Position numbers and translations under genes: made by a program. The notes under the pieces were generated by a model that saw nothing but the letters and a program-made list of their open reading frames with translations, was not told the origin of the DNA and made no database searches. From the NCBI GenBank assembly GCA_964035545.1, contig OZ037772.1, forward strand, positions 8,239,150 through 8,303,149: a stretch of DNA of 64,000 nt. The letters run 5' to 3'. Positions 17,001 to 45,270 of the stretch are shown one piece after another. Source of the stretch: Bugula neritina (taxonomy: Eukaryota; Animalia; Bryozoa). Position 1 is the first letter of the stretch; the number at the start of each line of letters is the position of its first letter.

Positions 17001-20000
17001 CTCAGCCTTCGGGTCATAAGCCGCGAGAACGAAATCTTTCGACAGCTCCTCTTTAATTCGGGCAAAGGCTATAGACTGAGCCTCGCCCCAGAACCAAGGA
17101 GATGTTTTACACAACAAATCCCTGAGAGGTCTAGATAGCTCCGCCAATTTAGGGGTAAACTTACTCAACTGATTAGCCATACCCAAAAAGCTACGAACAT
17201 CTGAGACACTCCGAGGAGTCCTGAAATCTCTAATCCCTTGAACTGCCTCAGGGTTGGCTTGAATGCCTTTATCAGAGATTGAATGCCCCAGAAACTTGAT
17301 TGAACTTTTAGAAAATTCACACTTGGAACTGTTCATAGTCATTCCTGCATCCGACATGCGTCTGAGGACAGCACGAACTCTAGCATCATGTTCCTCCACA
17401 GTATTACCCCAGACACAAACATCATCCATATGGACAATAACTCCCTCTAGACCACAAAGAACCTGTGACACAACTTTAGCGTAGATCTCTGGGCTAGATG
17501 ACAGCCCAAACGGCAACCTATGATAAGCATACCGACCAAATGGGGTCAAAAATGTAGTAAGGAGTTTACTAGACTTAGACAGGGGAATCTGATAAAACCC
17601 AGAGTTTGCATCCAACTTGCTGAAAACTTTCCCGTTACCTAATTTAGCTAGACTAGAGTCGACATGGGCCATTGGGTATACCTCCCTCCTGACCACTTTA
17701 TTCAACTGAGTGTAGTCTACACATATACGAATACGACCACTTGCTTTGGGAACTATGACCATGGGTGAGCACCAATCAGTTGGTTCACTAACAGAGAAGG
17801 TAACTCCTAACTCTACCATTTCATCTAACTCAGCCTTCACCTTATCTAATAATGGATACGGCACAGAACGCGGAACGCAAATAGCATGAGGGGGAGAACC
17901 GGTGTTTACTTGAATCTCTGCCTCCTGGCTCATTTTACCTAGGCCAGAAAAGAGACTAGGAAACTCATTTCTAAACTTATCAGCACTCTCAGTAACACAA
18001 TCAAGTTGGGTATTACATGATACAAGACCTAAGCCTACACATGCACGTCTACTAAGCAAGGCTTTATTATGAGCTACGACATATAGTCTATCTGCTACTT
18101 TGTACCTGCCTACAGATAGTGTACTGTCAAAATAGCCTAACACTGGTATCTGACTATTACTCGGTCCAAACAATGACTTGTCTGGCTGTTTAAGCTGTAC
18201 TGACTTACAGAGCTGCTGCGGGATGATGGTAACATCTGCACCGGTATCCAACTTGAATCGCACAGGCACCAATAGTTGATCTACGACTACAGACTTTGTC
18301 CATTCAACGTTAACATCTCTGTCTGTTACTTCACCCAAAAAATACTGTCCTTTGTTGCAGGGTTCAACATTGCTGGTGGGCTGGTCATAATCATTCTCTT
18401 CCACAGATTGTACTGCTCCTCCTTTTGACCTGCATACTCTAGCAAAATGTCCTCGTTTTTGGCATTTGTGACACACAGAATCTTGCGCAGGACATTTTCC
18501 AAATCTGTGTGTGTTGTGGCCACATCTACCACATGGGTTAGCATCGGCTTGAGCTGAATTAGCGGCCTTACTCTGTTGGGTTGAGTGTTTATGTTTACTA
18601 CTGCTGACTCTTACTGCATCAAGCGATTTAACATCATTGTATAGCTCCTTCACATTTTTGTCCACTTGTTCTGCTTGTCTAGCCATAGCCACGGCTGTTG
18701 CTTCAGTTAACTGGTCAATGTCCATCTTTTGCATCTCCCGGCTTAGCCCTTGGTCAGCTATACCAACAACTAGTCTATCTCTGATTTGTTCTGACCGCTT
18801 ATCTCCAAAGTCACATTTGTCTGCCAACTCATTTAAAGCACGAATATAATGTTCTACTGATTCGGCTTGCTGCTGGTCACGCTTGAAGAATTTTGCTCTT
18901 TCATAGATGACATATTTCTTGGGTGAGAAGTAGTTCTCAAATCCAGCTAGCACCTCATTGTATTTCTTTTTATTTTCTTCAGAGAGACCTAGGCTGCTAA
19001 AGATGCTTTCACTTGTAGGTCCCATACAATACAAGAAACTATTAATTTGTATTCCTTCCTCCTCTTTATCTAACTTAGAAATCTGTCTATATCTACTCCA
19101 TCTCTTAGCCCACTCTGCCCATTTCTCTGGCAAAAAGTCAAACTCAGCAGGTGGATTAAACTTTGCCATAACAGTAAATTGACAATAACGCAAGAAAAGG
19201 AAACCAAGGACAGCAGATGGCACGGATTAAACACGACAAACTTAAAACTTCGTACTGGTCACCATGTTGTGTTAATACCAAGATGATGTATTTTAGCGAT
19301 AAACATACGTACTATAACAATGCATACGAATAAAACAAACAGTACAGTAATTCCGCATGTGCGGTAATTCGAGTATAATACAACATTTAGCTTGTTTGAA
19401 GTCAGCATACCTGTGTTGCCTCTGATTTAACTTGAGCTAATAATCATCAGAACATGGTCTAGCAATCCGTTAGCATATGCTGCAGAAGGTCAGGAGTGAA
19501 TTTTTGCTGATGTAGCATGAAATTTTCTCAGATGATAGATATGCCGCATGCTTGATCTTCACAGCAAATTCAATTACTTCTCAGTTTTCTCTAAATCAGT
19601 CCTCATTTTAGGACTTCTTCTTGTAGACCAGATTGGTAGAGGGCTATGCATTCTGCTTCCACTTTGTGTCTATGGTGGTTAATTCTCCATTTCTCCAGAA
19701 TCTTGACTAATAATGTACCATTATTATATGATATCTCTTTCTTCATTTCAATTTTATATAATTTCATGATGCAAATGGCACATTAACTGAAACATTTTTG
19801 TAGAAAATAAAAATTCTCCATTTAACTGACAAATGCATGTTGCAAAAAAATGCATATAGCTAGTATATGGAAGTGCCATTCAATTATTATTACTAATCAA
19901 AAGTTGATGGTGTTTTTGTAGGCTACAAGTGCTGGTTCCGACATTCTGGAATGGATCCAGTAGTTAGTCAGATCAGTGAGAAAAAGACTGATACTTACTC

Positions 20001-21996
20001 TAAAAAGGAAATACTGAGGACTATGGGACAACACACGATCACAGATCTAAAGATTGAGGGTGACATACCTTCCGCTATTACTGAAATAGCTCCAAAAGTT
20101 ACTAATCTCTGTGTCAGATCTCTGACCAATCCTAACAGTCTGGAAGTGTAAGTCTGTGCCTGTATGTTACACTTAAACCCTTTATGTATTGAATAGCTCA
20201 AAGTAACAACAACCAATATCTGCTTACTAAAACTACACACCTATGTTGACTAGACTTGTCTAAAAGTAACCTTGGTTCTCTAACTGAAGAGTCTATAATC
20301 ATTTTATTTAAACCACTTTGAACAGATAGCGTCTCCATTTTCAGCTATGTATTTGTGTCAGATTAAAATATATCAACCTGTTTTAAAAGGAACACTTGTT
20401 CTATTGAATATAATTATACCACTGTCGATTTTTTGGAATTTGTAGAATATTTATGCTGAAGTTCTTGCAGCTATTAGATGTGTCTGACAGCCAGCTGAAT
20501 GACATACCTGAAAGGTAGGCTTTCACTGTTTTCAAATATTACATAATAATGAAAGATGGAAACTTGTGCGGAAATAGTTTTTATAAAGAATATACTTATT
20601 TATTATTATGTAATAACTGTTATCACACTTTCATACCTTTTGTAGCTTATTTAAGCTTCGGTTTCTTCACACGCTCAACCTGTTTTCAAACAACTTAACA
20701 CAACTGGATAGCAAGAGGTAGGATGAGGATGCAAGCTTGTGTCAAATTTAATTTTAAAGTTTATTTTTCATGTCTCACACTTGATTGTGCAACCAGAAAA
20801 ACGTTTTAGCACTTTCCTATTTCGTTACGTTCTATGACATTACGGTATTTTTAAAATTTGTGACAGGTTCTCTCGGCTCACCTACCTCAAGGTTTTAAAT
20901 GTGTCCAAAAACAAATTGACAGAATTTCCTAGCAAGTAAGTTGCTATTCACGATTCCCAAAGAATTACATTTAAGTGTAAATTTTAAAGGGTGCAAATGG
21001 TTTAAAGCTCAGAGATGCTAAATTAGTGTTTTAGCATTAGAAAAATGGTTATGCTATAGCTATATAAGCAAATAGTTTGTAAATAAAACGCTGTATAATA
21101 ATCTGAAGATTACATTTTGTTCTTTGTAGGTTATCGCAGCTTGTATATCTGCACACTTTGAACTTGTCACATAACAGAATGCAGCACTTAGATGACTGGT
21201 ATGTATTATATAAATTATAAAACAGCTGAACAAATTTTACTTCTTTTGCTGTGTTATTTACATTCAATCATGCGGTGTTGACCGTTTTTCTCAATTCAAA
21301 GACTTTTAAACACTGATCGATATAGTAACCAGCTGGAGCCTATATTAGACGAGTGAACATTATGATCACTGTACCAGTTGTTTGATATTGTTTTGCCATA
21401 CTTTTAACACTGCCATTTACTTTGTGTCGGCATGTTGCAGTTTTTCTGGCTGGAAGCGCCTTCAAATAATTGATGTATCTTATAACCATCTGAGGGTAAT
21501 ATCAGAAAGGTGAGTACCGATGTTATTAAATAAGCTGTCTGTATTATTTATGTTATTTTCTACTTTTTTATGCCAATTTATACATATATATTTTAGCCTA
21601 TCCCAGCTTATTTTCCTCCGAAGTTTGAACGTGTCTCATAACAGACTTAGAGCTTTGCCAGAAAGGTAAGCTGCTCTTGTGTGACAACCAATTGGTTGTC
21701 AACTCTTTGTCTTTTCGAAGCCAACTGCTGTGTATATTGTAAATCATTGCTTATTGCAGTGTGTATGAGTTGGTTTTAAAGAAAGCAATTAGGCCTATAG
21801 CTCATTATACTGCATAGACTTTGACATCTAAACTATTTTTTCTGCTGTAGCACTTCACAGCTGTCATATCTGCAAGTACTCAATGCATCACACAACCATC
21901 TCCATACTTTTCCAAAACAGTGAGTTTTGTTTTCATAACGATAACGTTTTAAACTTTGACTCCACTATCAAAGATGTGATTAAAAAGTATTGTGTG

Positions 21997-22048
<52 letters not shown>

Positions 22049-25000
22049 TGTGTTATATATAATTTCTTAGTGCTACTACTAGTGAGAAACACATTATTAA
22101 AATGTTTTTATAATTATGAGAATAGTGCACTAGACTCTATATGCCTGTCATTTTTCTATCAGTATTTTATCTTCTGTTATCAATATACAACTCAGTATTT
22201 TCTCCAAACCTTTTTCTTTGTTGCAGACTTGAAAAACTGATATTCCTTCAAAAGTTGAATGTAGCCAATAATCACCTGAAATCACTGCCTCCTCAGTAAG
22301 TTTTTGTGTGGTACTGTTGTGTTTTACCATAGTAGTATGTTCATTCTTTTTCGGTCTGGAATCAAAGTTTTTTCTAACTCACTTTTATTTTCTAGACTGC
22401 CTAAGCTCCAATATCTGACTGAGTTTGAGTATTCTAACAACCCGCTGACTATTACTCCAAAGCAGTAAGTTGTTATTCATTAGTGTTTTATTATCATAAT
22501 GTTATAGTTCCCAGTATTGTGGGTTTCAGTGTGTAATCGAGTTATTGCATAACATGTAATCCAAATCAACTCTGCGATTGTAGTTCAGATTATAGGAATA
22601 TATTTATACAAACAAACACACAATAAAAACTCTACATCTATTCAGATACGTTACAACAACTCAGCACAGTGTTTCTAGTTTGCCTGTTTACTAACAACTG
22701 CTCTACTACGCGGGAAGTCACAGTTCTAATAAAAATTGACGATTCCTATTAGAGGGTTTGTTATCTCGGGTCATCTTCTATACACGCAGTGACCCCGCAT
22801 TACAGTCAGAAGAGAATTAATGTTCTCCCCCTTTAATTATGACGATAATCCATCGAGCCACCACAATAAATCTACAATCAAAATGTTCTTCAATTCATCA
22901 TGAATTAGTAAAGTCAATAAGTTTTTATACATGCAAACGAATAAGTTTATGAAATCTTTTTAACAGGCTACTGCCGTCACAATACTCATGTTAAAGCAAT
23001 TAGAGAAACATTTTGTTTTATTTATTCATTAAGGAATAAAGTTCATTTAACTACTTTTAGACGATTTATAATAAGTTTGCTCTGTTAATATCATTCATCC
23101 AGGTTTCGAGCATATTGTAGTGGAGCACGCAATATGCGCATCCACGTGTTCCCTAGCCAATTAGAGATGCGTCAGGTGACAACCCCCAGCGATGCGTAAC
23201 GAGAGAGTAGTCAGTAGAGAGAGCGTACTAGCATTTGAAAAATGTAATACTTTTAATCCGTGTGCTTTCTTATATCATTTTATTAGTATGTAATTATAAA
23301 TAAATCTCTTCTAATCTTATCAAAAGCCCTATATTGCGGTGGATAACCAAGTCATAATTACAAGCTAGGAACTCACGCACAGTATTTGCACGAATTACTA
23401 CAGTGGTGGCAGCGGTGAGATACTAGCTATTGTATGGAGACGATGGAAAAACATTAGAACATCATGGCCGAAAGTGCAGCTTCAACTGAAGAAGGTGAGC
23501 GAGACATTATCATAAACTCTCTCGGGGCCGAAGAGGAGGCATATAAATATACATTAGAGGCTCCCGTCTTCACGGGCCTTGAAGATGTTGAACAATTTAT
23601 TCGAGAATTCCGTGAAGTTGCAGCCATTACAAGATGGCCACCGAGAGTAGCCCTGATAAAGCTACGAATGGCACTGACGGAGCAAGCCAAGCCGTACGGG
23701 CTGAGACCTAGCGTAGACGGGATCATTGCTGCGCTACGGGCCCGTTTTGGCATACCTGTCGCCGACGCCAAAGCCCGTTTGCAGGGACTGCTCCGCAAAA
23801 CATGTACACCGTTCCCGGACCACCCTACTCTGGTGAAGAGACTGGCACAGATCGCGTATAGCGACCTGCCAGAAACACACAGACGGCGCTATACATTCGA
23901 GGCTTTTGTACAATCCCTCAACGACTTGGACCTCCACCACCAGTTACAAGCGAGAGGAGTGACCACGATAGAGGCTGCAATTCAGGAAAGCGAGGCTTAT
24001 CTAGGAGCCGAGCAACTCTATAGAACGGTAAAGGCTATCCCGCAGACCACTAGGGAACCAGACCATCCGGTCCGAGTGGCTGCCGCTACCACTAGCCCCT
24101 CTTTGGAGATAGAGGTCGACCGCTTAATGACTATGCTGGGACAGTTGGTGGCGACCATAACATACAGCAATCCCATGGAGTACAAGAGACCAACAGTAAA
24201 AACCCCCAGACCGGCTACTCGTTGCTGGAGATGCGGCACCAGGGGACACCGCCGCTCGAGCTGCCCACGACCTAGGAAGCAGCAGAAACCCCACGATCCC
24301 CGGAAGCCCCCAGAGCTCCGCGGACCAAAGCAGAGAGGAAAACGGGGTGGATACCGCCAGGCATCCGTACGGACCCGGCGGTACGCCCTCCACCAGTGGC
24401 AAACACTTCGTAGGAACCAGCCAGCCAGGACGACCACAAGAACCCTTCTCACTGCCTCTCACTAATCGCTTCGGTCCGCTACCAGAAATAGAGCCGACCA
24501 GCGAGGCCCCTACGGGCATCAGAGGGGATCAATCCACCCCTCCGCAAGGAAACTTTCACCGGCCCCGCTAACCGCGGAACAAACGGGCACAGCCCCGTTC
24601 GGCCGAGACCGAGCACGCTGGGGGAGTACGGGTACAGCCTCACGGAGATAGCTACTTCTTGCCAGGGAAGGTGGCTAGCAAAGCTGTCACCTTTCTGCTA
24701 GACTCCGGGTGTACCACTAATCTCCTCAGCCGTCGAGTCTTCAACACCCTCCCCTCTAGGGAGAGGGGAGCCTTAGCTCCCTATACCGGGGAACCAGGCA
24801 CCCTAGCTGACGGGTCGCGGATTCCATTCTACAGTGTTATAGAGCTGATTGGGCGCGTCCGCGACCAGGCTATTCAGGAAACCTTCGTCATCAGCCAACT
24901 CGAGGAGGATGCTATTCTAGGAACGCCGTTCTTGAAGAGACACGGTTGCCGCATTGACTTTAGCAAGTCAGCCATGCTGATGGCCGACAAGGAACTCGCC

Positions 25001-31000: not shown

Positions 31001-32037
31001 ACAAATACATATTATAGTCAACCTAGTTAGCTACTAACACTGTCCAAGACTGCTGCGGGTGCCAGAAGGCATTGCTTATATACACAGAGTGGATCCTGAT
31101 TGGATTACACAAGATTTCGGTGGTCTTGTCCGTAGTTGCTGGTGGTGTCGAGCGTAGTTACTAGCAGGGCACTGCATAGAAATGCGGCATTACTTGGAGT
31201 TGTCGTTCTTGACCATAATCTATTGAGTTATGTTTAGCAGGGGGTAATGGAGGTATACTTTCCATAACCATTACAATATTCACATCTAGGCATAATCTCA
31301 TTAATATTTTCAGACCACAGTCTATCACTGCCACATCTAATGAGTCTAATACCCAGGATCCAGGGAACTCTAATTTCAAAGAGTCTGCTTATGAAACTGG
31401 AGCTGGAACGGACGAGAAGCAAACCAGTGAACTTGGGACTGAAGAGAGTATGTCACATATTTTAATAATTGCCTTTCTTACGCTTCATGTTATCAGGCTT
31501 AACTTATTTAAACTAAATGTTGCGTGGTCTAGGGGTTAGAGCGGTTGCCTAGTAAACACGAAGGTCATGGGTTCAAGCCCGGACAAAGGCCATTGGTGAT
31601 GTTAGGAAGAGCATCCAGTCATAATTGCTCCTGCGCCTCATTTAAATAAGTCCTTAGCCGCTTTAACAAAAACCCTTTCTATCAGGGGTTTCTCACAGGG
31701 ATAGTGACTATAAACTTGCGTGAGTTGGGTTTTAAATATAGAAGTGTGTTTATTCTCGCAGACTGAGGGAAAAAAAAAATAATAAATAACAGAAAGTGCT
31801 GGATGTTTGATACTCTAAAAAGATAGCTATTTTGTGGTAGCCAAAGTCATTGTATATCAACAACAAAGAAAACCATAATGTAGCTAACATAGCTATGAGA
31901 ATATGATTATAGCTGTTTAACAAGAACTTCTCAAGCTGATGTAATGACCCAACATTAATATTCGCGTGTGCCTGCGTGTGCCTGCGTGTGCCTGCGTGTG
32001 CCTGCGTGTGCCTGCGTGTGCCTGCGTGTGTATGTGT

Positions 32038-32078
<41 letters not shown>

Positions 32079-32102
32079 TGTATGCGTGTGCATGCGTGTG
32101 CA

Positions 32103-32154
<52 letters not shown>

Positions 32155-35100: not shown

Positions 35101-38100
35101 GGTGAGTTACTAAAATGTTTATCTCAATTCTAATAGTGCTGGTCATGTAATCTAGTATACAGAACGTGTTTAGTCATGTTCTTCCTCTGTTTCAGTCTTT
35201 CTCGGCTCCACAATCTACAGACGTTAAATGTATCTGACAATAGTTTTGACAAGGGAATGTTGCCTGCAGTAATATTGAAGATGAGCTCTCTCATTGAGCT
35301 ACATCTGGTTGATTGCCAATTACTTTCATTACGCAAAAGGTTAGTTGTTTGTTGGTTGAAAAGCTGTGTAACTAATAAACTTTAAAGTTTTGTATTGAGA
35401 GAATAAACTTGATTTAACAGCCAAGCAGCTTTCAGCTGCCACCATGACCTGAGGTGCGGCCACTGAATTTAGGTAAAAATGGCACAGGTAATAATGGCAC
35501 AGATAATAATGGAATAAGTGGAAGTTATCTAAAAATGGCAAACTTATGTTCAATTTAGCTAAACCCCAAACTCGCATTCTAAACCCCTAACCCCACCCTA
35601 AACTCTAATATTGAAACTGTGCTACTCTTACTACTTTGTTGTGTGTGCCATTATTACCTGTGCCATTACTACCTGTGCCATCTTTACCGTGCCATTTTTT
35701 ACCTGTACCATTTTTACTAGACACGGTGGCCACCCCATGGTCACACCTCAGCTTTTTTCCCAACAAGCCAACACAGGTTGGCACGTTAAGGTGCTCTGTA
35801 CCAGACACCGGTTTCACTCTGTACCCCCTTACCAGCACTACTTTTACTGGTAGGCAAATAAAAACTAGTTTTTGTTATTAGAAGTAATAATAGCTAGTAG
35901 GAAAAAAATATTAGAAGCAGTAGTGAAAATGATAAGAAGAAGTGATACTTGAAGGTAATAACCGTTATCAGAAAGCAAGATTTCAAATTTATCTGCCGCT
36001 GTTGCAGTCAAAAATGAAAAAGAAACACGAGCAAGCAATATGGCCGCTCAACGGGAACACTTAGTGGTTTGCACGTAGAACTCTCATTTTGTTTGTGTGA
36101 TTCATCTGAAAAATTTTGGTATGAAAGACATGGCTAATGTTTATTGTAGAGTCTTCACCAGTAGCATCTCATCACTGAAGCGCCTTCAAGTGCTAAACCT
36201 GTCTTTGAATAGACTTCCTACAAGTATCTTAGATGCTGTGTTACCGCCCCTGGTATCCTTGAGAGAATTGAATTTGAGCTAAAGATTTTACCAAAGAGGT
36301 ATGCCAAATATAAAAAGATGTGATTACAATTCCATAAATCTAAACTCAGTTTAGTACTAACTATAATAACTCAAAATGCTTTTAGAGCTTGTGCAGCATT
36401 GTATCCAATCGTTGTGGCAACTTACTTTTTCATGAAAGTTGAATTGTATTTGACAAGAATAATTATTTTATACAATTGAAATGAAGTTTTACTCCATTTA
36501 AATATTACATAAAACTTATATAAGAATAAAGAATTTGTTCTGTGAAGTTCTGTCCACATTCAGAAAAACTATTCAACTCCGAAAAACACAGCTGATTTTG
36601 CCTATCATCTTTTATAGAAAACCAGTGTTTTTAAAGTAGTTTGGTTAGGCAGTAGTTGAGCATGCTACAGTATTTGTCAAGCAAAAGCTTTCTTCATTTT
36701 AATTTAATCACTTTGTTTCCCAATGTGTCTGCTGTGTGCCTTTTACTAATATTGTAGTGATTTTTAGCGCGCAGTGATTTTAGATTTATTTTTCCAAATT
36801 TTTCGTTTAACTACAGTGATTTTTGTGAAATTATGTAAACCGATCTCTGCCAAAAATTGGAAGTGTGAAGGTGTCGCGACTTCCCACTAGGTTTGATGGC
36901 AACTGATTGTCAGATCCGATCGGATTTAATCGAATGTGATCGGACATGTCCGAGGCTCTGACATCTTCGCAGGAACCCTGATTTTCGGACGCAATCAGTA
37001 AAAGATTCGCGAAGGGACAATTTTCCAGTATATAAGAAGGCGAGCTCACAGAGTAGAATCAGTCTACCACTGGAGCTCACTAGATCAAGACACACAAATA
37101 TTCTTACAGCATTTAATAAATATTATTCTACTCAACACGGACAACATATCTTGTTTCTTATATTACGGAGTTATGCTTCCCTTTTAATTGCATTCTACCC
37201 ACAAAACTACTACAATATACACTCAAACTAATATTATGTATTTCTCTATTGTTTTACACGAGTGGCCTCACGTTACTATAAAACGTAATATAATGTTCTA
37301 CAGCATATCTTCACTGAGAAACCTTGAAGTGTTGAATGTCACTGGTAATGTGCTCTCTGATAATCAACCGGATAATGCATTCTCTTCTTTACTATTATTG
37401 AGAGAGTTGAACATGGAGAACTGTCAGCTGAAAACTCTTCCAAAGAGGTATTCATATCATATAATCTAATATTTCTCTTGCTGCGTTTTTTTTATTTGGT
37501 TCATATATCTGCTGTAAAAACCAGTAATAAATTTGAATGAACATGTGCCAGTTTTTATAGCAGTATTATAAAACAATACAGATGTTATCGCATATTATCG
37601 TATACGTTATCATATATTATAGTTTGTTATTTTCTCATGAATTATAGTACACATTGCTATAAATCATAATATGTGTTCTTATATATTATAGTATATGCAT
37701 GCTGAAGAATCTTGAATATTTGAATCTATCTGAAAACTATCTAAAAAAGTGTTTACCAGAAGACATGTTCATCTCTTTGCTCTCACTGCAAAAAGTCAAC
37801 CTCCGACATGCTGGACTGGACTCTCTGCCAAAGAGGTAAATCTTTCAATATTGTGCTTTAGCACTTGCACAGCCAAATAGTGTGCACAGCAAGCAAATTT
37901 AAGATTTTTCAAAAGTAATTGTCGTTTGTCTTGCTTATAAAGAGTGTGAATTTTCAAGGTTCAAAATATCAGTAGGAGCTGTTATCTCTTTTGACTCAAT
38001 TTATTTCCCATTTGTTAATAAATAAGCTTGTATTGTATAGCTATATTATTACTCAAGAGGGGCAAGTAGATGAATTTGAATGAAAATATCTTGCTTATTT

Positions 38101-41100
38101 AGTCACCAAATATAGCTAATATAGTTATTTTCCAAAACCATAATAGCTAGGAGGGAACATTGGACTAATATGTACATGTTGAACTGCATAAAAATAGGAA
38201 TGTTTGAGGCTGACTGATTATACCTTTCAGTGAACTCCACACACTAATATCTATATGTTATTGGACTTATCATTATCTTGGGAAAATATCCTTACATGCT
38301 TGATAAATAGATTAATTTTTTCAGCAAGATTAAATGCCAAACAAGTAGCTTTAGTGGAAATATTTTTTTATGTTTGTGCAATTTTTTGAAACTAAAGCTT
38401 GGCATTACTAGTTTCAACAACTATATTAATATTTCAACAACTAAATTTTATCTGTTTTTTCTTTTAGTGACTATCTTCAGTAGGCTATAGCGTAATTGAT
38501 TGCCACCACAGATATTTTGGGCTATTAATTTGTTTCTGCTCTATGATATATTATGTGCTGTTATATTTTATAGCATAGAGGGCCTTCAAAATTTGCAAAG
38601 CCTGGACACTTCAAACAACCACTTCATTCACTTACCGTCTTCTATATACACATTGAGTAGTCTACAGATATTAGACGTTTCCTACAACAATTCCTTGACA
38701 TCCTTGGATCCAGAAATATTGCAGCTCTCTCAACTGCAGGTTCTGAAAGTGGACGGCTGTTATGCTTTTACATCTCCACCACTAGCAGTATGTGAAAGAG
38801 GATTAAATGCTGTGCGACAGTACTACACAGATTTGGCTAAGGGTGCTGGTAAAAACTTACCACTTGTTACAGTGGCTGTATTAGGTAATGCACTGGCTGG
38901 GAAGACCAGTCTAATCAAAACGTTACAGAGCACTGACAAGAAGAGAATGCTGACTGACAGAAGTCCTAACGCTGAGATAGATGAGACTACAAAAGTTTTC
39001 AATGTTGAAGAAATTGAAGTAGATGGTACAGTGCTTCGTCTCATTGATATGGGAGGCCTGGAGGTCTACCACGTAACATATCAACTTACAATGAGACAAA
39101 ACTGCATACCATTAATTGTAGTCAACATGGAGCAGTATGATCAGATTTCAAGTGAGTGTCCAGTTAGAGAGGCTGTCAGAAGGCTGGCCTTTGACTTCAT
39201 GTCTCACCTCTATCTTGCTTATCCGTCTCTTGGCCCACCTAAGCTTGTTTTCACTCATAAAGACAAATTCTCAAACCTCGTATTTAGAAAGCTCCAACAG
39301 GATTTTTTCACAGTTTTACATCAGTTGTGTGCAGAAATTCTTGTAGAAGAGAAAGCATTAGGTGGTGAGGCTGTTCCAATGCAACACTTCAATGATTTAA
39401 TTGGACGAGTTTTTGCCAATGACGATATTTATGAGATTGGAAAAGAAAATGAGTACGAGGTGTTTGACAAGATAAAAAACTCCCTCCTTCAAAGCAGTCA
39501 ATGCTTTGTTAAATCTTTGCCTTTGATTTGGGAGGATGTTAATCGATTGGTTTTGTCTCTTTCATCTCCCTACAGCACTTTTGATAATATTCTAAAAACT
39601 GTACAAACAGAGCTTCAACACATTGAGTCAAGTCAGCTAGACATGATTTTCACATACATGCATGACTGTGGCAAGATTCTTTGGTATAAAGATATCAGCT
39701 CTCTTCATTTTTACATATTTCACAAAATTTCAGAGGTCACCAGACTTCTATGTGTTTTGCATCACCATGATTCAAGCATATGGCAAAGTCGAGTTGATCA
39801 ATTTTTGCCATATGTTTCAAAAGAGCAAATGTTTGTTGAAAAGGAAGACTTTGAGAGGTTTGTGAGTCATTTCACCAACACCGGTTTGATGAGGCAAGAC
39901 CTTCTTTGCTATCTAATTAGAAAAGAAACATCATTTAGCAGCGCAAAGGATGTAGAAGTTGCTGTTTGCTTACTTCAAACCTTTCGTCTGTTGCATGGTC
40001 CTATACAGGTTGGTTTCGAGGAGCCATGCTTTATTGTACCTCAGTTTTCCAATGATTACTACAGCACTTCCTACTCTCCACCGAAGAGCTTGGTCCTTCA
40101 AGTTGAAACACAGTTTAATGGATTGGCCTTACCACAGTATGTTTACCATCAGATGACTGTTGGTTTGCTGAAGCAGTTTCCTGGTGAATTTGCTGTCATG
40201 AAAGTGAAGAGAAATGGAGCTAACATCTACCAAGATGGAATACACACGCAGCTGGTACATGATAACAAGTCTAGAAAAATCTTGTTATACGTGGCATCCG
40301 ATGTTGCCAACATCAGCAGGATGTGGAAGACGCTCATCGCCACCTCCAACCACATACTGAAACCAGTTATGGAAACTTGGCCTGCAAGCAGGCTAGTCAC
40401 CGCAAGTTACTGCGCTCACTGCTTATTACTAGGACTTCCATGTCCTAAAAAGGTAATAAATCCTCGGTGGTGTCTTCGGTCCTTGAAGTCTCCCTTACCA
40501 AAGATCAAGCTGTGTAGCGGATCTTCAACCACCTTGTGTGCTGACGAGGAAATACCTTCTGCTATGGTCTACCCCTGTATGTTTATTTAACTTAATTTTA
40601 TTTAAAATTGTTTTCTTCAGATTTGAAATCTGACTTCCTAAAATATTCTATCTTATGAGAACGTAGCTTAGAGTAGACCTGTATACAAACACCTAATCGT
40701 TTCTTAGTCTACCAATAATATAGTAAAATTGAATCACCTCCATACTTTTGCACATTTTTGAGACAATGTCATTATTGCGAGTGCACATATGATATTCTAT
40801 ACGCAATTTTTGAGTAGTTTACATAAAACTAATATGTGAAAACATTTGTTGCGCAGGTGAGACAATCACAGAAGTTGAAGCTGAAAAATTGGATAAGTTT
40901 GTGAATGAACTGATGAGCCGGAGAGAAGCAAACAAAGCTTCTAAATCTGGTAAAGTACTAGTAGTTTAGGTTTAGGAATAACTGGTTTTAAAGCACTCCA
41001 ATTCTAAAAAAAGTTTAAAGTTTAAACAAAATATAGCACTCGTATAATAAAAATGGAATGAAGTTGTGAATGATTTCGCGTGGCAATAAATTATCTATAG

Positions 41101-44100
41101 GTAGTATCTTCAGTCATCATTGGTCAGTTTTATTAAGCGGTGTCATCCCAGATAGACGCTTCCTAGTTAGACGCCAGAATTGTCTTGCTTGTGAATTATG
41201 TTAGAGCAATGTAGTGCTGGATGCTTGTTTATGATAAAAAGAGTTCTCATTTTTGTAAATTGAAAGTTGTTTTAGGTTATATTCTGATTTGGAATAAAAA
41301 ATTACATAACAGTAATTCATTTGTATTTACTTTCTGGTGTTGCAAACATAAGAAGATGTGATTTTTTAATATCTTGTAATAATTGTGCATTTTGTAATAG
41401 TACCGTTCTCTTGTTATAGTAGGCCTATTCCGTAATAGTATTGCTTTCCAAATAAAGATATTTTAGTGAGTTTTAAGTATAATGCTATAGTAATAGATTT
41501 TCACCCTCTATTAGTTTTGAAGTAACTGCGTGAGTCAGTATTATAATTACTGTTGCGTATCGTTGTGAATGCTGTAATTGTAGCTAAGTTGGGCTAGCTT
41601 TCTAATGCCTTATTATTGTGATTGTTGTTAAGCTTTCAGCATAATGTAATTTTCATGAAATACGCATTTCCAGAGTTATTTTCCCTTTTTGCTATTTTAT
41701 CGTTTTGCATTAATACTGATACTGGAAATTTGTGTAGCTTTTATGAATGCCTTCAATAGGTTGTTATTATAGCTAAATTCTTGGCCTATTGAATTATTCA
41801 TTCTCCTTTGTCTACTTTTCTTTTGTTACTGTCAAGCTTAACTTTCTTTTGTCTGTTGGAACATTCTAGATGTGAATTTTTGTGTATAAAAGCAGGCGAG
41901 TTTCCAGTGTAGATTCAGACTACTACTGGAGCTCGCTGCTAGTAGGGCCCTAAGCTGTATCTGATACAATAAAGGTTATCCTCATTTGTACTCAAATACT
42001 TGGCTTATTCTTTCTAGAGCATGTAGGCACTAGTTGCATTCAGAACCCACAGTTTACTACACTATTACACATTTTTATAATTACACAGTTTTTTAAAGTT
42101 TCTTTTTTCAGCTTGTTTTAGATGTTTATGCTGTCGCTTTATTTCATTACCTGTTATTAATCACTAGTGGGAGAGTACCACTGATTTCTGTAATTTTAAA
42201 GGGACAGGCAACTTCCACTTAAGAATAAGTTAAATGAAAACTCAACAATGTTGCTTTTCTTTGGATACCCCTTCTCTAATTACAATCTTGGGTGTTCGCG
42301 GTTCATTTATTATAATATTATTGCATCGTATGAGCTGTAGTTATTATTTTGTTGCTATAGGAGAGAGCAGTGTGCACAGAGAACTAAAATTAGACTATGA
42401 TGATCTGAGTGATCTCTCCGATGAGGATGACTATCTCTACCCTGATAAGAAGGAAGTGGAGCTGAAGTTTATAAGACCCAAACTAAATCCAACTACTAAC
42501 CCAAGGATAACACAACTGTTCTCAAATACTGACAGGGTACTGACTTGCTTTTTAGTCTCAAGTTACAAATTCATTTAGTGGGCTTCATTCAGTCGATTTT
42601 AACATTAATTTATAACAGCTTCCAAGTGAATTTTTCTATGCAAGCACAAGTAAACGTACACAAGTGCAGTGCTTCTGTTTTATTGTTAAACATCCTTATT
42701 TTCAAAAATTTATTTAGGTATAACTTCAAAAATAAACATTTAAATTATTCTTTTGCAAAGCAGGTATAATTTTTTGCTTTGTAAATTTTGTTCTTGTGTT
42801 CACTCTACGAGTTTTGTAAGTTGTTCTAAATATATTGCTAAGGATATTATGAATGTGTAAGCAAGGTATATAGTATCTACCTATATTCTGTCAATAACCT
42901 ACATTTAGGTGTACAATATGACACGAAAAAGAGGAAGAGCTTTGATAATAAACAACAAGAACTTTGATGAAAGACCAGATCTGTGTAGGAATGGTTCAGA
43001 TGTTGATGTTGAAAATTTATCTACCATGCTGAAGGCCTTCATGTTTGATGTTGTGACACACACAGATCTAACGGCAATGGTACATGTTAAACATATACAC
43101 TGGTTTTTAGCCTTTGGTATAGTTAATAAATAGTTGCATAGCTTGTCTTGACAGAAATTTGAGTAAACTACCTACTATTTCATTTTATTTGAACAAGTTA
43201 GAACTTGATTAGCTTCAAGAATTGCCCCTATATGGGAGATTTTGCGGTTTTCAAAATTAAAATGGTTTTTAAATAACACCAACAAAAGGTTTTAATTCTA
43301 AAATGTTTGCACTATAAAATCTTTTAGGCTATTCTGTTAACCATCAAAGATGAAGTACAACGTAAAGAACACGAAGACCTGGGATGTCATGTGTTGGTTA
43401 TCATGAGTCATGGAGGAGTGAATAACTATATCTATGGTGTTGACATGAAAGTATTCAGGCTGACAGATGTGTATGATCTACTGACACCTCTGAACTTTCC
43501 AGCCATGGCTGGGAAGCCCAAAGTTGTGATTATTGAAGCTGCTAGTGGAAGTGAGTGGCACATTTACTATATGATGTGAAACTTGAAATACTTTAAGGTT
43601 TTGCTTGGAGTCTCAGTTGTGACGCATCACATATTTCACATCTTTATATTTTTATTATCCATTGCCGGAGTAAAGCTAATTATTTTGACTTGATAGAATA
43701 TAATGTTATGTTGTATCATATTTCATATATTCCATTTATAATATCTAATAATCATACTATTCAGTTGTTTCTAAAATTGAATCATTGTCACTATAATAGT
43801 TGAGTTTTAGGAAGCTTGCTGTGCAGGTGAATATTTTCATTTTCAAGCAATCAGAGGCCTACTATATGTTACAGCAAGGACAGATGTTGGTGAAAGAGGT
43901 ATAAACCGAGCACTTGATCTTGGACAAGCTAAGGTTGAGGATTCTGTAGTAGCCAAACCTGTTGGAGTTTCTGGGGCTAAAACTGCTGAAGCTCTAACCA
44001 GACTGAATTATGATGACCTGTTAGTAATGAAGTCAAGTATGGAGTGTAAGTACTGGTGTAGTTTGCATAGCAGCCATAGTATGAATAGTTACCAGACGAA

Positions 44101-45270
44101 TCAGGGTCATTTTGACGAACATTAAACCCATAATAAAAGTATTAGTTGCGGCCTTTTGACCACTTTGGAATTTGCATAAAAGGAGATCCCATTTTAAACA
44201 AACCAAATTAATATTTTGGAAAATAGTATAAAAACAAAGCTATATACAATGAAATTAGCACAATTGAAGAAACCACATAGCCTAAGTGAGCAAATAGAAG
44301 CAAAGTTTTATACCTTTCAGTCTAAAAAATAGTGCAATTTTCAGGAAGAAAATTATTTTTTATAAAAGGGTCAATTGCTTTTTAAACAATATTATTAAAT
44401 TTGGCCACTGGTGCAAATAATGGAGAAATGTTACTTCAAGTTGTTTGCATGTTCCATGCCATCGGTTGTATAGATTATACATATTAGTTATATGCGGCTA
44501 TATATGTGGCTAAATGTGTGGCTAAATGTGTGCGTGTGCGTTCTTGTGTATGCATATATACGTATGTATGTATGTATATATAATTATATTGATTTCTTCA
44601 CATTTAAATTTTATAATTGCTAAATTTATTATATTGATTGTAATAATTATGCTAACATGCATCAATTAAATCGTTTTTTCTTGACATATTTTGTTTAATG
44701 TCCTTCAGCATACTTGCGCATACAAATGTTTTTTGGATGCATTTCTAAAATTGAAAAAACGCTTACTCTTTACTCACTTGTATTGTAGCATTTGTATCAC
44801 GCCGTCACCCGGTATATGGATCTCTAATGATTAGAGCTCTGGTATCGTCCATGTACACGCATGCCTGTCACCATGATCTCTACACCATATTTAAACAGGT
44901 ATTTCCATCTCTACAACTTTTTGTATGTGCATCCATTGACCATCTTGTTCATGCAGCTTGTTTTAAAATGTCTCACTACCATGCACTTTGCTAATAGCCA
45001 ATAGGAGTATAATATGATCATTTTATATAAATTGTAATGCTGAGAACCTCGTGTGATTTGCACACACCTCTGATAGGCTGAGTTTTATATATTTTATTGG
45101 AGTATAAAATTACTAGTATGTGGAGGGCGTGGTTAACTATTTAGGTGCAGACCAAAGTGAGGAAACTGTGTGTAGACAGAAATCTGCATAGTGGACAGCT
45201 GGTTGTAACTTGGGACACCCTCACTCACATGAGAAAACTTTACCTCTTTCCTGGTTTCAACGGCGAGTGA
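6256..45270 (+). CDS. Multi-exon LRR-ROC-COR (ROCO family) protein with a duplicated N-terminal helical module and a C-terminal catalytically inactive caspase domain; 5' end outside window
   Basis: Phase-consistent GT-AG exons: 6256-7010, 7122-7192, 7470-7532, 7955-8079, 10265-11016, 11221-11294, 11536-11586, 11844-11944, 12098-12154, 19922-20147, 20446-20514, 20646-20717, 20867-20935, 21130-21198, 21441-21509, 21597-21665, 21851-21919, 22227-22295, 22396-22464, 31314-31447, 32330-32437, 34467-34559, 34651-34876, 34964-35101, 35196-35339, 37304-37447, 37692-37835, 38574-40576, 40857-40949, 42361-42536, 42909-43079, 43328-43550, 43875-44045, 44789-44898, 45145-45270 (TGA). Total 7103 nt plus 1 upstream base = 2368 codons, with no internal stop if the broken exon 36165-36298 is skipped. 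Confidence 0.7.
8349..8697 (-). mobile_element. Solo LTR related to the element C LTR
   Basis: TGTAGT...ACTACA termini, 4-bp TSD ATAG (8345-8348 and 8698-8701). Both ends resemble the reverse complement of the 23116-23402 LTR ends. Confidence 0.85.
8930..9270. mobile_element. Non-autonomous foldback/MITE-like element (AATGGCAC-array inverted arms around an AACCC-rich core); other copies at 5036-5260 (cut by element A) and 35471-35720
   Basis: GGTAAAAATGGCAC-type units on the left, GTGCCATTTTTACC-type units on the right, found at three places in the window. Confidence 0.7.
9046..11005 (+). repeat. Copy 2 of the ~2-kb duplicated block
   Basis: See 5036-6996. ORFs 6273-7040 and 10282-11031 are near-identical. 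Confidence 0.95.
10265..12154 (+). CDS. N-terminal module copy 2 (4 exons) plus a basic linker exon 12098-12154
   Basis: Exons 10265-11016, 11221-11294, 11536-11586 and 11844-11944 have the same intron phases as copy 1. The linker reads DPKTQKKKAQKRKDAPPSK. Confidence 0.8.
14822..19385 (-). mobile_element. Intact Ty3/Gypsy LTR retrotransposon (element B, Mag-like)
   Basis: Identical 121-bp LTRs (14822-14942, 19265-19385; TGTTG..CAACA). 5-bp TSD TTTAG. PBS TGGTGACCAGTACG next to the 5' LTR. Polypurine tract at 14943-14953 (minus strand). One uninterrupted ORF. Confidence 0.97.
15159..19223 (-). CDS. gag-pol: Gag-Pol polyprotein of element B (probably starts at MAKFNPP)
   Basis: Two Zn knuckles (CGRCGHNTHRFGKC, CHKCQKRGHFARVC), protease LDTGAD, RT HMDD, RNase H TDAC/EQEALG, integrase HHCC plus DLF/DNGPQY/EAERAVQTVK. 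Confidence 0.96.
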   Translation of the reverse strand: MPSAVLGFLFLRYCQFTVMAKFNPPAEFDFLPEKWAEWAKRWSRYRQISKLDKEEEGIQINSFLYCMGPTSESIFSSLGLSEENKKKYNEVLAGFENYFSPKKYVIYERAKFFKRDQQQAESVEHYIRALNELADKCDFGDKRSEQIRDRLVVGIADQGLSREMQKMDIDQLTEATAVAMARQAEQVDKNVKELYNDVKSLDAVRVSSSKHKHSTQQSKAANSAQADANPCGRCGHNTHRFGKCPAQDSVCHKCQKRGHFARVCRSKGGAVQSVEENDYDQPTSNVEPCNKGQYFLGEVTDRDVNVEWTKSVVVDQLLVPVRFKLDTGADVTIIPQQLCKSVQLKQPDKSLFGPSNSQIPVLGYFDSTLSVGRYKVADRLYVVAHNKALLSRRACVGLGLVSCNTQLDCVTESADKFRNEFPSLFSGLGKMSQEAEIQVNTGSPPHAICVPRSVPYPLLDKVKAELDEMVELGVTFSVSEPTDWCSPMVIVPKASGRIRICVDYTQLNKVVRREVYPMAHVDSSLAKLGNGKVFSKLDANSGFYQIPLSKSSKLLTTFLTPFGRYAYHRLPFGLSSSPEIYAKVVSQVLCGLEGVIVHMDDVCVWGNTVEEHDARVRAVLRRMSDAGMTMNSSKCEFSKSSIKFLGHSISDKGIQANPEAVQGIRDFRTPRSVSDVRSFLGMANQLSKFTPKLAELSRPLRDLLCKTSPWFWGEAQSIAFARIKEELSKDFVLAAYDPKAETTIQTDACRNGIGAVLLQLQPDGSKRVVAAASRALTDTEMRYATIEQEALGVVWACTKFRNYITGITVKIQTDHKPLIPLLNEIELDKLTVRIQRFRMRLMRFAYVVEHIAGKDNVLADALSRSQASPSVDEVAFVEEVELAVKEGHKLFASSQRLVQLAKLQRADEVLAQVIKFVETSWPEYLTNQDILLRPYFESRSLISIQDGLLALGDRIVIPQVERLEVLRTIHQGHLGVTKCRARARQYVWWPGISQQIADMVRQCNTCRMHANVVVEPLMVAEFPQRPWEKLGSDLFFVHDRWYLLVVDYYSRFVEVALLAELTSKEVISHMRSIFARHGVPDVLVSDNGPQYASHEFKLFVSSYQFAHVTSSPKHPQANGEAERAVQTVKSLLKKETDPYLALLAYRSSPLENGLSPAELLMGRKLKTTVPALPKLLIPQPVERLAVQEKEELKRSQVKENFDIRHKVAQLPPLKRGDRVRIRDLNRDAVVIQQCAPRSYTVQDTGGTELRRNRRSLTPTHSSPVMSLASDLAVQFKDQPIHSSPRQTTVFGGQAQQSPSDSRLDVQPRERPVSPHQAFVPLDRAKQTHSVSSSAVRLSKTRSGREVRAPLKLDL
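19922..22464 (+). CDS. LRR block 1: cap exon plus nine single-LRR exons
   Basis: Eight 69-nt exons and one 72-nt exon, all phase 2-2, each encoding LxxLxxLxLSxNxLxxLP (e.g. LSQLIFLRSLNVSHNRLRALPE). The last has an NNPL cap-like ending. Confidence 0.92.
20231..20290 (+). pseudogene. Decayed remnant of the LRR exon that is intact at 34964-35101
   Basis: ACACACCT..ACTAGACTTGTCT.AAA.T.ACCT.GGT matches the intact copy. The acceptor CAG is missing and an in-frame TGA is present. Confidence 0.7.
21992..22052. repeat. (GCGT)n microsatellite
   Basis: Read directly from the sequence. Confidence 0.95.
23464..24465 (+). CDS. gag: Gag of element C
   Basis: Lies after the PBS. Zn knuckle CWRCGTRGHRRSSC. 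Confidence 0.85.
   Translation: MAESAASTEEGERDIIINSLGAEEEAYKYTLEAPVFTGLEDVEQFIREFREVAAITRWPPRVALIKLRMALTEQAKPYGLRPSVDGIIAALRARFGIPVADAKARLQGLLRKTCTPFPDHPTLVKRLAQIAYSDLPETHRRRYTFEAFVQSLNDLDLHHQLQARGVTTIEAAIQESEAYLGAEQLYRTVKAIPQTTREPDHPVRVAAATTSPSLEIEVDRLMTMLGQLVATITYSNPMEYKRPTVKTPRPATRCWRCGTRGHRRSSCPRPRKQQKPHDPRKPPELRGPKQRGKRGGYRQASVRTRRYALHQWQTLRRNQPARTTTRTLLTASH
24659..28942 (+). pseudogene. pol: Disrupted pol of element C
   Basis: Protease LDSGC, RT YLDD, RNase H and integrase fragments, with numerous stops and frameshifts. Confidence 0.92.
29008..30095 (+). pseudogene. Accessory ORF of element C: acidic N-terminus, two zinc fingers, Pro-rich segment, coiled-coil end
   Basis: ORFs 29008-29403 and 29470-29967 share a frame and are separated by one TGA. 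CRLCQLHFTTPCRIRVHIPQH fits C-x2-C-x3-F-x5-I-x2-H-x3-H, followed by CPC-x12-H-x5-C. A heptad-like tail lies in ORF 29748-30095. Confidence 0.7.
31522..31726 (+). mobile_element. tRNA-derived SINE, copy 1
   Basis: A-box-like TGGTCTAGGGG and B-box-like GGTTCAAGCCC, then a ~140-bp body shared with 56278-56489. Confidence 0.8.
31964..32214. repeat. (CCTGCGTGTG)n plus (TG)n compound microsatellite
   Basis: Read directly from the sequence. Confidence 0.95.
33691..34446. mobile_element. Non-autonomous DNA transposon, CACTA/EnSpm-like termini
   Basis: 23-bp terminal inverted repeat CACAGGATAGTTAAGGGCA(A/T)CCT, flanked by TT on both sides. Internal direct repeats. No ORF. Confidence 0.7.
34651..37835 (+). 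CDS. LRR block 2: duplicate cap exon plus double-LRR exons (138-144 nt, phase 2-2)
   Basis: Cap exon 34651-34876 is paralogous to 19922-20147. Exons 34964-35101, 35196-35339, 37304-37447 and 37692-37835 each encode two LRRs. Confidence 0.9.
36165..36298 (+). pseudogene. Frameshifted double-LRR exon (10 nt shorter than its 144-nt sister exons)
   Basis: Intact AG/GT ends. Reads ISSLKRLQVLNLSLN...LRELNLS then TAA. LKILPK resumes in another frame. Confidence 0.85.
36753..37214 (+). mobile_element. Solo LTR (distant relative of the element A LTR)
   Basis: TGTAGTG...CTACTACA, TSD ATAT. The 3' half shares TATA.AAG.AGGCGAG, ACTGGAGCTC and TTGCATTC..CCCACA with the element A LTR. Confidence 0.85.
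38574..40576 (+). CDS. Large exon: final LRRs plus ROC GTPase plus COR
   Basis: LRRs and an SPP..VC..G...VRQY cap. P-loop GNALAGKTS (38884-38910), G3 DMGG (39046-39057), ROC-type G4 THKD (39253-39264). COR-like YMHDCGKILWY, FIVPQF and a terminal CAHC. Confidence 0.93.
41489..42061 (+). mobile_element. Solo LTR of the element A family
   Basis: Near-identical to 4474-5035. TSD CTAT (41485-41488 and 42062-42065). First base is A rather than T. Confidence 0.93.
42909..45270 (+). CDS. Caspase (peptidase C14A) domain, p20+p10, pseudo-enzyme
   Basis: VYNMTRKRGRALIINNKNF..RNGSDVD..DLT; VIMSHG; GKPKVVIIEAASG (QACxG position); DDLLVMKSS; SRRHPVYGSLMIRAL; TLTHMRKLYLFPG. Five exons. Confidence 0.93.

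What the first reader, a model, noticed from the sequence alone, without database searches (positions are those of the whole stretch)
19922..45270. LRR-ROC-COR GTPase spliced in frame to a C-terminal caspase domain: candidate ROCO-based immune or death receptor
Seen: the ROC-COR exon (ends 40576, phase 1) joins 40857-40949 (1-1), 42361-42536 (1-0) and five caspase exons in one open frame, with canonical splice sites. There is no separate start or CARD/DED prodomain ahead of the caspase. Established: characterised ROCO proteins end in kinase (LRRK1/2) or death (DAPK1) domains, or have no effector (MFHAS1). ROC-COR undergoes nucleotide-dependent dimerisation, and initiator caspases are activated by induced dimerisation. 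Inference: LRR sensor, then GTP-controlled dimerisation switch, then caspase-fold output is an NLR/apoptosome-like logic in a single chain, using ROC-COR in place of NACHT/NB-ARC. I do not know a characterised animal example, but I could not search databases.
Basis: partly seen in the sequence, partly recalled or inferred. Interest (0 to 1): 0.93.

Follow-up and report, generated by a model that had tools for sequence, protein, structure and literature searches.

The report
Bryozoan ROCO-caspase gene, catalytically dead copy
This moss-animal (bryozoan) gene really joins a leucine-rich-repeat sensor, an LRRK2-like GTPase switch and a caspase in one spliced message, but this copy has lost the caspase's catalytic cysteine, so it looks like a non-cutting regulator (or a decaying copy) within a large, uncharacterised family of one-chain cell-death or immune receptors.

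Summary
The fusion is real. All six junctions from the ROC-COR exon to the stop appear in putative RNA contigs of close relatives (five in two studies, one in a single study) and in none from the DNA run. The ROC-COR exon folds like LRRK1/2 and bacterial Roco, and its GTPase motifs are intact. Homologues point to a Bugula-type bryozoan. Watersipora has at least seven full-length fusions and amphioxus one predicted, probably of separate origin. (1) This copy is a pseudo-caspase: QACxG reads EAASG, whereas all ten fetched relatives keep the Cys. (2) The gene probably starts well before 19922, with orphan helical repeats; a 32-exon, 2294-residue frame is open if one frameshifted LRR exon is skipped. 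(3) Bacterial Roco dimerises with GDP and falls apart with GTP, so GTP need not be the 'on' state. ROC-COR and caspase trees of paralogues conflict, which suggests module swapping. The architecture is already predicted in bacteria (PMC8195603). I found no paper on animal examples. This scan found the family before on other DNA of this genome.

The parts
6256..8079 (+). Orphan helical repeat, unit 1 (exons 6256-7010, 7122-7192, 7470-7532, 7955-8079); probable N-terminal part of the gene; begins with a phase-1 acceptor, so more exons lie upstream of it
   Evidence: AG/GT, open frame; 80-88% identical to repeats in B. neritina models KAF6024715, KAF6031501, KAF6037830. No Pfam, PDB, Atlas or prokaryotic match of weight
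10265..11944 (+). Orphan helical repeat, unit 2 (exons 10265-11016, 11221-11294, 11536-11586, 11844-11944), phase-1 donor
   Evidence: Tandem duplicate of unit 1 (95.9% over 1966 nt). In three B. neritina models the equivalent exon is joined to the cap exon
14822..19385 (-). Young Gypsy-type LTR retrotransposon inside the predicted intron; not part of the protein
   Evidence: 121-nt LTRs 100% identical, TTTAG on both flanks, 1355-aa gag-pol ORF 15162-19226
19922..20147 (+). LRR N-cap exon A (WFRHSG motif), internal exon, phase 1-2
   Evidence: homologous caps in paralogues and Watersipora
20446..22464 (+). Eight single-LRR exons of 69-72 nt, all phase 2-2 (20446, 20646, 20867, 21130, 21441, 21597, 22227, 22396)
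   Evidence: no RNA check
23116..30688 (+). Older Gypsy-type LTR retrotransposon in an intron; pol broken into pieces; not part of the protein
   Evidence: 287-nt LTRs 95.8% identical, ATAT on both flanks, gag and pol fragments
31314..32437 (+). Two low-complexity linker exons, 31314-31447 (phase 2-1) and 32330-32437 (1-1)
   Evidence: Phase-compatible and open; no homologue in fetched loci; no RNA check
34648..34876 (+). LRR N-cap exon B, duplicate of cap A
   Evidence: 82% identical to 19920-20276 at DNA level
34964..37835 (+). Double-LRR exons 34964-35101, 35196-35339, 37304-37447, 37692-37835 (138-144 nt, phase 2-2)
36165..36298 (+). Broken double-LRR exon, 10 nt shorter than its 144-nt neighbours; gives a stop if included, frame is kept if skipped
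   Evidence: not covered by the read check
38574..40576 (+). Large exon: last LRRs, ROC GTPase (P-loop at 38884, DxxG at 39046, G4 at 39253) and COR
   Evidence: Pfam Roc E 6e-6, COR-A E 0.007, both under cut-off; profile hits C. tepidum Roco, LRRK1, LRRK2; AlphaFold pLDDT 92; Foldseek top hits LRRK1 E 2e-22, C. tepidum Roco E 1e-19, COR-only 3dpt E 2e-9
40857..40949 (+). Linker exon 1 (phase 1-1)
   Evidence: RNA joints on both sides; 87% identical to KAF6031501
42361..42536 (+). Linker exon 2 (phase 1-0), with an acidic D-L/V-S-D motif conserved in Bugula and Watersipora members
42909..43079 (+). Caspase exon 1
   Evidence: Peptidase_C14 E 7e-10; RNA joints
43328..43550 (+). Caspase exon 2: catalytic His kept (SHG, 43406-43414), catalytic Cys replaced by Ala (EAASG, codon 43541-43543)
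   Evidence: Peptidase_C14 E 5e-10; motif and codons against ten relatives; X1 contig 42939-44844 has 0 differences
43875..44045 (+). Caspase exon 3 (intersubunit linker and start of the small subunit)
   Evidence: acceptor fixed by frame and RNA joint
44789..44898 (+). Caspase exon 4 (small subunit)
   Evidence: Peptidase_C14 E 0.04; 74-92% identical to close relatives
45145..45270 (+). Caspase exon 5, ends in the stop codon
   Evidence: 83-98% identical to most close relatives

Best explanation
Shown: one spliced reading frame joins LRR, ROC-COR and a caspase fold. It belongs to a multi-copy bryozoan family whose other members keep the His-Cys dyad. Inferred for the family: single-chain intracellular receptors. 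Variable LRR cassettes bind a ligand, the ROC nucleotide cycle sets whether COR dimerises, and the tethered caspases are activated by proximity. By analogy with bacterial Roco the dimer would be the GDP or empty state. Some members start with an MGxxxS motif and may be membrane-anchored. Inferred for this copy: it cannot cut (Cys to Ala) but keeps the fold, the dimer-forming small subunit and an intact GTPase. It would act like c-FLIP, pairing through COR and the caspase fold with active paralogues to damp or tune them, with extra N-terminal helical repeats of unknown role.
For: RNA joints absent from DNA. ROC-COR fold and motifs. At least seven full-length fusions in Watersipora RefSeq models with QACSG/QACGG. 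Over 30 JGI clusters for the ROC-COR exon; all nine looked up come from two samples, and every contig long enough has caspase exons downstream. Symmetric phase-2 LRR exons as in brown-algal ROCO candidate receptors (PMC11378527). ROC-COR and caspase trees conflict (p-AU 3e-5 and 1e-4). Cys loss took two changes in one codon, while private changes in this caspase domain are 16 non-silent to 16 silent, like paralogues (0.7-1.8) and below the 2-3 expected without selection (expectation from general knowledge).
Against: No RNA contig is shown to come from this exact copy. Whether close expressed relatives carry Cys or Ala could not be read. One LRR exon is frameshifted and two retrotransposons sit in introns. 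The N:S count averages over the whole branch and cannot exclude recent decay. No ligand, GTPase, dimer or cleavage data exist for any member. The geometry that would let a COR dimer align two caspases was not modelled.
Confidence: 0.45

Rival explanations
1. The family is as described, but this copy is a decaying duplicate. Cys loss, the 10-nt LRR deletion and the retrotransposon insertions are early pseudogenisation in a birth-and-death family.
For: Broken exon, two LTR elements in introns, the only Cys-less member among 11 loci and 11 full-length caspase-bearing homologues, no copy-specific RNA.
Against: 2294 codons over 32 exons stay open with canonical splice sites; the broken exon is skippable in frame; all GTPase motifs are intact; the N:S ratio is not raised.
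Confidence: 0.33
2. The window holds two genes: a 5' gene (helical repeats, cap A, eight short LRR exons) and a 3' gene (linker, cap B, LRR, ROC-COR, pseudo-caspase). The duplicated cap marks a tandem duplication or a recombination scar, not one transcript. This concerns the 5' end only and is compatible with either reading above.
For: The cap is duplicated with a remnant of the next LRR exon at 20208-20288. The related B. neritina contig L024 has a single cap and lacks the 14-kb stretch between the two. No RNA was laid 5' of 39400.
Against: All phases fit across both retrotransposon introns. I found no stop exon for a 5' gene and no start exon for a 3' gene. KAF6031501 joins helical repeats, cap, LRR, linker and caspase exons in one model, though that model is itself a prediction.
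Confidence: 0.3
3. The family serves developmental or housekeeping cell death (polypide regression, metamorphosis) or non-lethal proteolysis, not pathogen sensing.
For: No infection data; bryozoans recycle polypides regularly (general knowledge); caspase pocket residues vary (E/H/Q before the Cys).
Against: High copy number, variable LRR cassette number, lineage-specific clades and module swapping are typical of conflict-driven receptor families and unusual for core developmental genes.
Confidence: 0.2
4. This copy is an active protease, as the finding's title implies, using another residue or an alternative exon for catalysis.
For: His, fold and the two substrate-binding Arg positions are kept. 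An intronic 16-nt AG..GT stretch at 43811-43826 reads EACCAG.
Against: The Ala codon is confirmed by source-like DNA. The 16-nt stretch would shift the frame, and the RNA joint skips it (43550/43875). Cys-to-Ala is the standard inactivating change in caspases (general knowledge).
Confidence: 0.03

Closest known systems
Bacterial LRR + AP-GTPase (Roc) + COR + variable effector conflict systems, including COR+CASPASE (Kaur et al. 2021, PMC8195603; e.g. OQX07365.1)
   Same: Same domain order and same proposed sensor-switch-effector logic; several paralogues per genome.
   Different: Predicted only; prokaryotic. The bryozoan ROC-COR forms its own clade apart from bacterial rows; relatives' caspase is animal type (best PDB hits caspase-3, CED-3, caspase-9); intron-rich with cassette LRR exons.
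Human ROCO proteins MFHAS1/MASL1, LRRK1/2, DAPK1
   Same: LRR-ROC-COR core and fold; RefSeq auto-names the Watersipora homologues 'MFHAS1 homolog'.
   Different: No kinase, WD40 or death domain; caspase fold at the C-terminus; 14-16% identity in structural alignment; multi-copy.
Brown-algal ROCO candidate immune receptors (PMC3341825, PMC11378527)
   Same: Expanded ROCO family with one LRR per phase-2 exon (72 nt there, 69-72 nt here); a small group carries a C-terminal peptidase (IPR009003).
   Different: No caspase reported there; somatic or alternative exon use was not tested here.
Amphioxus LRR-ROC-COR-effector proteins, e.g. B. floridae C3XQ16 (caspase, QACRG) and B. lanceolatum XP_066297267 (OTU)
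   Same: C3XQ16 has the identical domain order by Pfam.
   Different: Its ROC-COR nests among amphioxus ROCOs with other effectors; grouping it with bryozoans is rejected (p-AU 2e-4), so the fusion is probably independent. It is one old gene model and could be mis-joined.
c-FLIP and other pseudo-caspases
   Same: Caspase fold without the catalytic Cys, alongside active relatives (comparison from general knowledge; PMC8195603 mentions cFLIP as an inactive caspase).
   Different: Recruitment would be through ROC-COR, not DED; His is kept; heterodimer formation untested.
NLR inflammasome / Apaf-1 apoptosome
   Same: Repeat sensor, NTPase switch, caspase output.
   Different: Ras-like GTPase with COR in place of a STAND ATPase; no CARD/PYD adaptor; one chain; dimer rather than ring expected.

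Membership tests
ROCO GTPases | Roc domain followed directly by COR | tested here: met
   Pfam hits just under cut-off; AlphaFold model pLDDT 92 matches LRRK1/2, C. tepidum Roco and COR-only chains
ROCO GTPases | Intact G1, G2, G3, G4 motifs | tested here: met
   GNALAGKT, DETT, DMGG, THKD; conserved in the family alignment
ROCO GTPases | Nucleotide-dependent monomer-dimer cycle through COR | not testable with these tools
   Known for C. tepidum Roco (PMC5714945); no dimer model was built
Active caspases (Peptidase C14A) | Caspase fold with large and small subunit sequence | tested here: met
   Peptidase_C14 on exons 1, 2 and weakly 4; homologue P0066 matches caspase-3/9/CED-3
Active caspases (Peptidase C14A) | Catalytic His in SHG | tested here: met
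   43406-43414
Active caspases (Peptidase C14A) | Catalytic Cys in QACxG | tested here: not met
   EAASG in this copy; Cys present in ten fetched loci and in Watersipora and amphioxus homologues
Initiator caspases | CARD or DED prodomain | tested here: not met
   About 90 residues of linker between COR and caspase; no death-fold hit on the exons scanned or on full-length homologues above cut-off; the two linker exons themselves were not scanned
LRRK1/2 and DAPK1 | Protein kinase domain | tested here: not met
   None in the model or in full-length homologues
MFHAS1/MASL1 | LRR-ROC-COR without C-terminal effector | tested here: not met
   Caspase exons are spliced on
MFHAS1/MASL1 | Orthology to vertebrate MFHAS1 | not tested
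   No vertebrate MFHAS1 in the tree
NLR / STAND receptors | NACHT or NB-ARC ATPase | tested here: not met
   The NTPase is Ras-like Roc
Exon-shuffling ROCO receptors (brown-algal type) | LRRs encoded by symmetric phase-2 cassette exons | tested here: met
   Eight 69-72-nt and four intact 138-144-nt exons, all phase 2-2
Exon-shuffling ROCO receptors (brown-algal type) | Alternative splicing or shuffling of LRR exons in transcripts | not tested
   The single read call covered 39400-45399 only
c-FLIP-like pseudo-caspase regulators | Heterodimer with an active caspase that changes its activity | not testable with these tools
   Needs biochemistry

The most novel reading that the evidence does not exclude
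Bryozoans use a large family of single-chain LRR-ROC-COR-caspase receptors as a GTPase-gated counterpart of the NLR/apoptosome system. Recombination reshuffles LRR cassettes, ROC-COR switches and two caspase types among paralogues. Some copies, like this one, have become catalytically dead decoys with added orphan N-terminal repeats, giving sensor/helper or activator/inhibitor pairs.
Probability: 0.3. Interest if true: 0.9.

Novelty: new variant of a known kind. Interest (0 to 1): 0.7.

Why it matters
How the ROC-COR nucleotide cycle controls a tethered effector is a long-standing open question for LRRK2. A natural ROC-COR-caspase fusion gives a direct read-out, because caspases report dimerisation by cleavage, and this Cys-less copy is a natural control or regulator. 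If the family is immune, it is an animal intracellular receptor class built on a GTPase and not on a STAND ATPase, arisen apparently more than once (bacteria, amphioxus, bryozoans), in a phylum whose immunity is barely studied.

Tried and rejected
The joined model was not sent to any search or folding tool; it was assembled only inside local scripts for frame checks and local comparisons. Read-through stop after the COR exon: not supported, the 40576/40857 joint is in three putative RNA runs; short isoforms are not excluded. Assembly typo at the Cys codon: rejected (X1 contig identical). Alternative EACCAG micro-exon at 43811-43826: rejected (frame, RNA joint). Identity of the helical repeat: Pfam nothing, PDB nothing, Atlas only weak dynein-tail-like hits with low recognition and none once those are skipped, AlphaFold pLDDT 39 on a shallow alignment, shape search TM at most 0.32 by query, no prokaryotic relatives; the earlier HEPN-like idea is neither supported nor excluded. 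Ten paper searches found no description of an animal ROCO-caspase; subscription journals are mostly missing. Horizontal transfer from bacteria: not favoured, not formally tested for the caspase.

Full report
Observation. The large exon 38574-40576 ends in phase 1 and joins 40857-40949, 42361-42536 and five caspase exons (42909-43079, 43328-43550, 43875-44045, 44789-44898, 45145-45270) in one open frame with AG/GT sites. I laid four runs on 39400-45399. Contigs of three putative RNA runs from two studies show the joints 40576/40857, 40949/42361, 42536/42909, 43550/43875 and 44898/45145; 43079/43328 is in one run. The DNA run X1, probably the source, shows none and tiles most of the stretch with no differences, apart from a repeat near 41520-42040. 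Most laid RNA contigs are under 99% alike, so they prove splicing in close relatives, not expression of this copy. The RNA label is the tool's guess, but intron-free joints absent from DNA support it.

Domains. The large exon gives Pfam Roc (E 6e-6) and COR-A (E 0.007), both under the curated cut-offs. Its AlphaFold model (pLDDT 92) matches LRRK1 (E 2e-22), C. tepidum LRR-Roc-COR (1e-19), LRRK2 and COR-only chains. G1 to G4 are intact. Caspase exons 1 and 2 pass the Peptidase_C14 cut-off.

Organism and family. Closest named homologues are from Bugula neritina (80-98% in several exons) and Watersipora subatra, so the window is a cheilostome bryozoan, probably of the B. neritina complex (inference). 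Watersipora RefSeq has at least seven models with LRR, ROC-COR and a caspase ending the chain, auto-named MFHAS1 homolog or uncharacterised. Over 30 JGI clusters match the ROC-COR exon. All nine looked up come from two samples whose record prefix I recall as the B. neritina mitochondrial accession (own knowledge), and they carry caspase exons downstream. Exon bins in X1 are far deeper than unique intron bins, in line with many copies, though the tool warns that depth is no copy number. Earlier notes of this scan count 50-100 copies in this genome; I tested that only in part.

This copy lacks the nucleophile. The QACxG motif reads EAASG (codon 43541-43543, GCT). Ten fetched loci read HACSG, EVCSG, ETCSG, EACSG, EACSE or QACAG, and Watersipora and amphioxus homologues read QACSG, QACGG or QACRG. 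An X1 contig covers the codon without difference. His is kept, as are the Arg positions that line the Asp pocket; the Gln is Glu in this subclade (residue equivalences from general knowledge). Private changes in the caspase domain are 16 non-silent and 16 silent, within the range of four paralogues. That indicates constraint over most of the branch but cannot date the Cys loss.

The 5' end. Position 19922 is a phase-1 acceptor. Upstream lie two tandem units of an orphan helical repeat (6256-8079, 10265-11944). In three published B. neritina models the same repeat is spliced to the same cap exon, and one (KAF6031501) continues to linker and caspase exons. A 32-exon chain from 6256 to 45270 is open for 2294 codons if exon 36165-36298 is skipped. 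That exon is 10 nt short and would end the frame. Two Gypsy-type elements sit in introns. The cap exon occurs twice, and a related contig has only one, so the 14 kb between them is an insertion or a recombination product. None of these 5' junctions was checked against RNA. One B. neritina repeat model and three Watersipora members begin with MGxxxS, a possible myristoylation signal (inference). The repeat's fold stayed unknown.

Evolution. Bryozoan ROC-COR domains form one clade, apart from amphioxus and bacterial rows. B. floridae C3XQ16 has the same domain order, but forcing it into the bryozoan clade is rejected (p-AU 2e-4), so the fusion probably arose separately. Among Bugula loci two caspase types exist. 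L001, L017 and L020 are 69-70%, 69% and 63% identical to this copy in ROC-COR but 43-44% in the caspase; L004 is 50% and 78%. Each tree rejects the other's grouping (p-AU 3e-5 and 1e-4; groups were named after seeing the identities, and contigs could be chimeric). The simplest reading is exchange of effector modules between paralogues.

Mechanism. Shown: architecture, splicing in close relatives, expansion, cassette LRR exons, discordant module histories, loss of Cys here. Inferred: LRR ligand binding changes the ROC nucleotide state, COR dimerisation brings the tethered caspases together, and cleavage follows. In C. tepidum Roco the dimer is the empty or GDP state and GTP makes monomers (PMC5714945), so hydrolysis or nucleotide release is the likelier trigger. 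A D-L/V-S-D motif in the linker is conserved from Bugula to Watersipora and may be a processing site or a phosphorylation site. For this copy I favour a c-FLIP-like non-catalytic partner (0.45) over a decaying duplicate (0.33).

Comparison and novelty. LRR+AP-GTPase+COR with a caspase among at least 24 effectors is predicted for bacteria (PMC8195603). Expanded ROCO families with cassette LRR exons are known in brown algae, and Trichoplax ROCOs carry CARD, death and TIR domains (PMC4104024). No paper in the library describes an animal ROCO-caspase. It is a member of the ROCO family, not an active caspase, not an NLR and not LRRK. Verdict: a real, uncharacterised variant of a known kind.

Noticed in passing
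window:14822-19385: Apparently young Gypsy-type LTR retrotransposon with unusually short (121 nt), identical LTRs and a single 1355-aa gag-pol ORF on the minus strand.
   Followed up: partly
window:1-4300 and 23116-30688: Two related Gypsy-type elements (69% identical over 3.3 kb), both GC-rich (about 58%) against 35% host DNA; the second has an extra ORF region at 29404-29964 with no Pfam match.
   Followed up: partly
window:13102-13119: 18-nt AG..GT stretch resembling the end of exon 11844-11944; could be an in-frame phase 1-1 micro-exon or an alternative start (contains ATG). Not in the B. neritina models.
   Followed up: partly
window:20208-20288: Remnant of a double-LRR exon behind cap A, marking the edge of the duplication.
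   Followed up: partly
window:4475-5036 and 41490-42062: High-copy interspersed repeat (92.5% identical pair; very deep in X1), also present in putative RNA contigs.
   Followed up: no
L024:7900-15900: B. neritina contig with about ten near-identical double-LRR exon-intron units in tandem after the cap: ongoing LRR cassette amplification.
   Followed up: no
X1 record 6 and joint 40241/42907: A 2635-nt contig present in DNA and RNA runs carries COR-like and caspase exon 1 sequence close together; perhaps a paralogue with short or no introns between them.
   Followed up: no
P0119 (B. lanceolatum XP_066297267): LRR-ROC-COR with a C-terminal OTU protease domain; amphioxus ROCOs seem to carry variable effectors as bacterial ones do.
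   Followed up: partly
window:56542-57054 and 60067-61515: Exon-like ORFs of another gene, the second with an 11-copy 27-nt coding repeat (60303-60607); no Pfam match of weight.
   Followed up: partly
window:58056-59081: 34-nt minisatellite, 30 copies, 94% matches.
   Followed up: no
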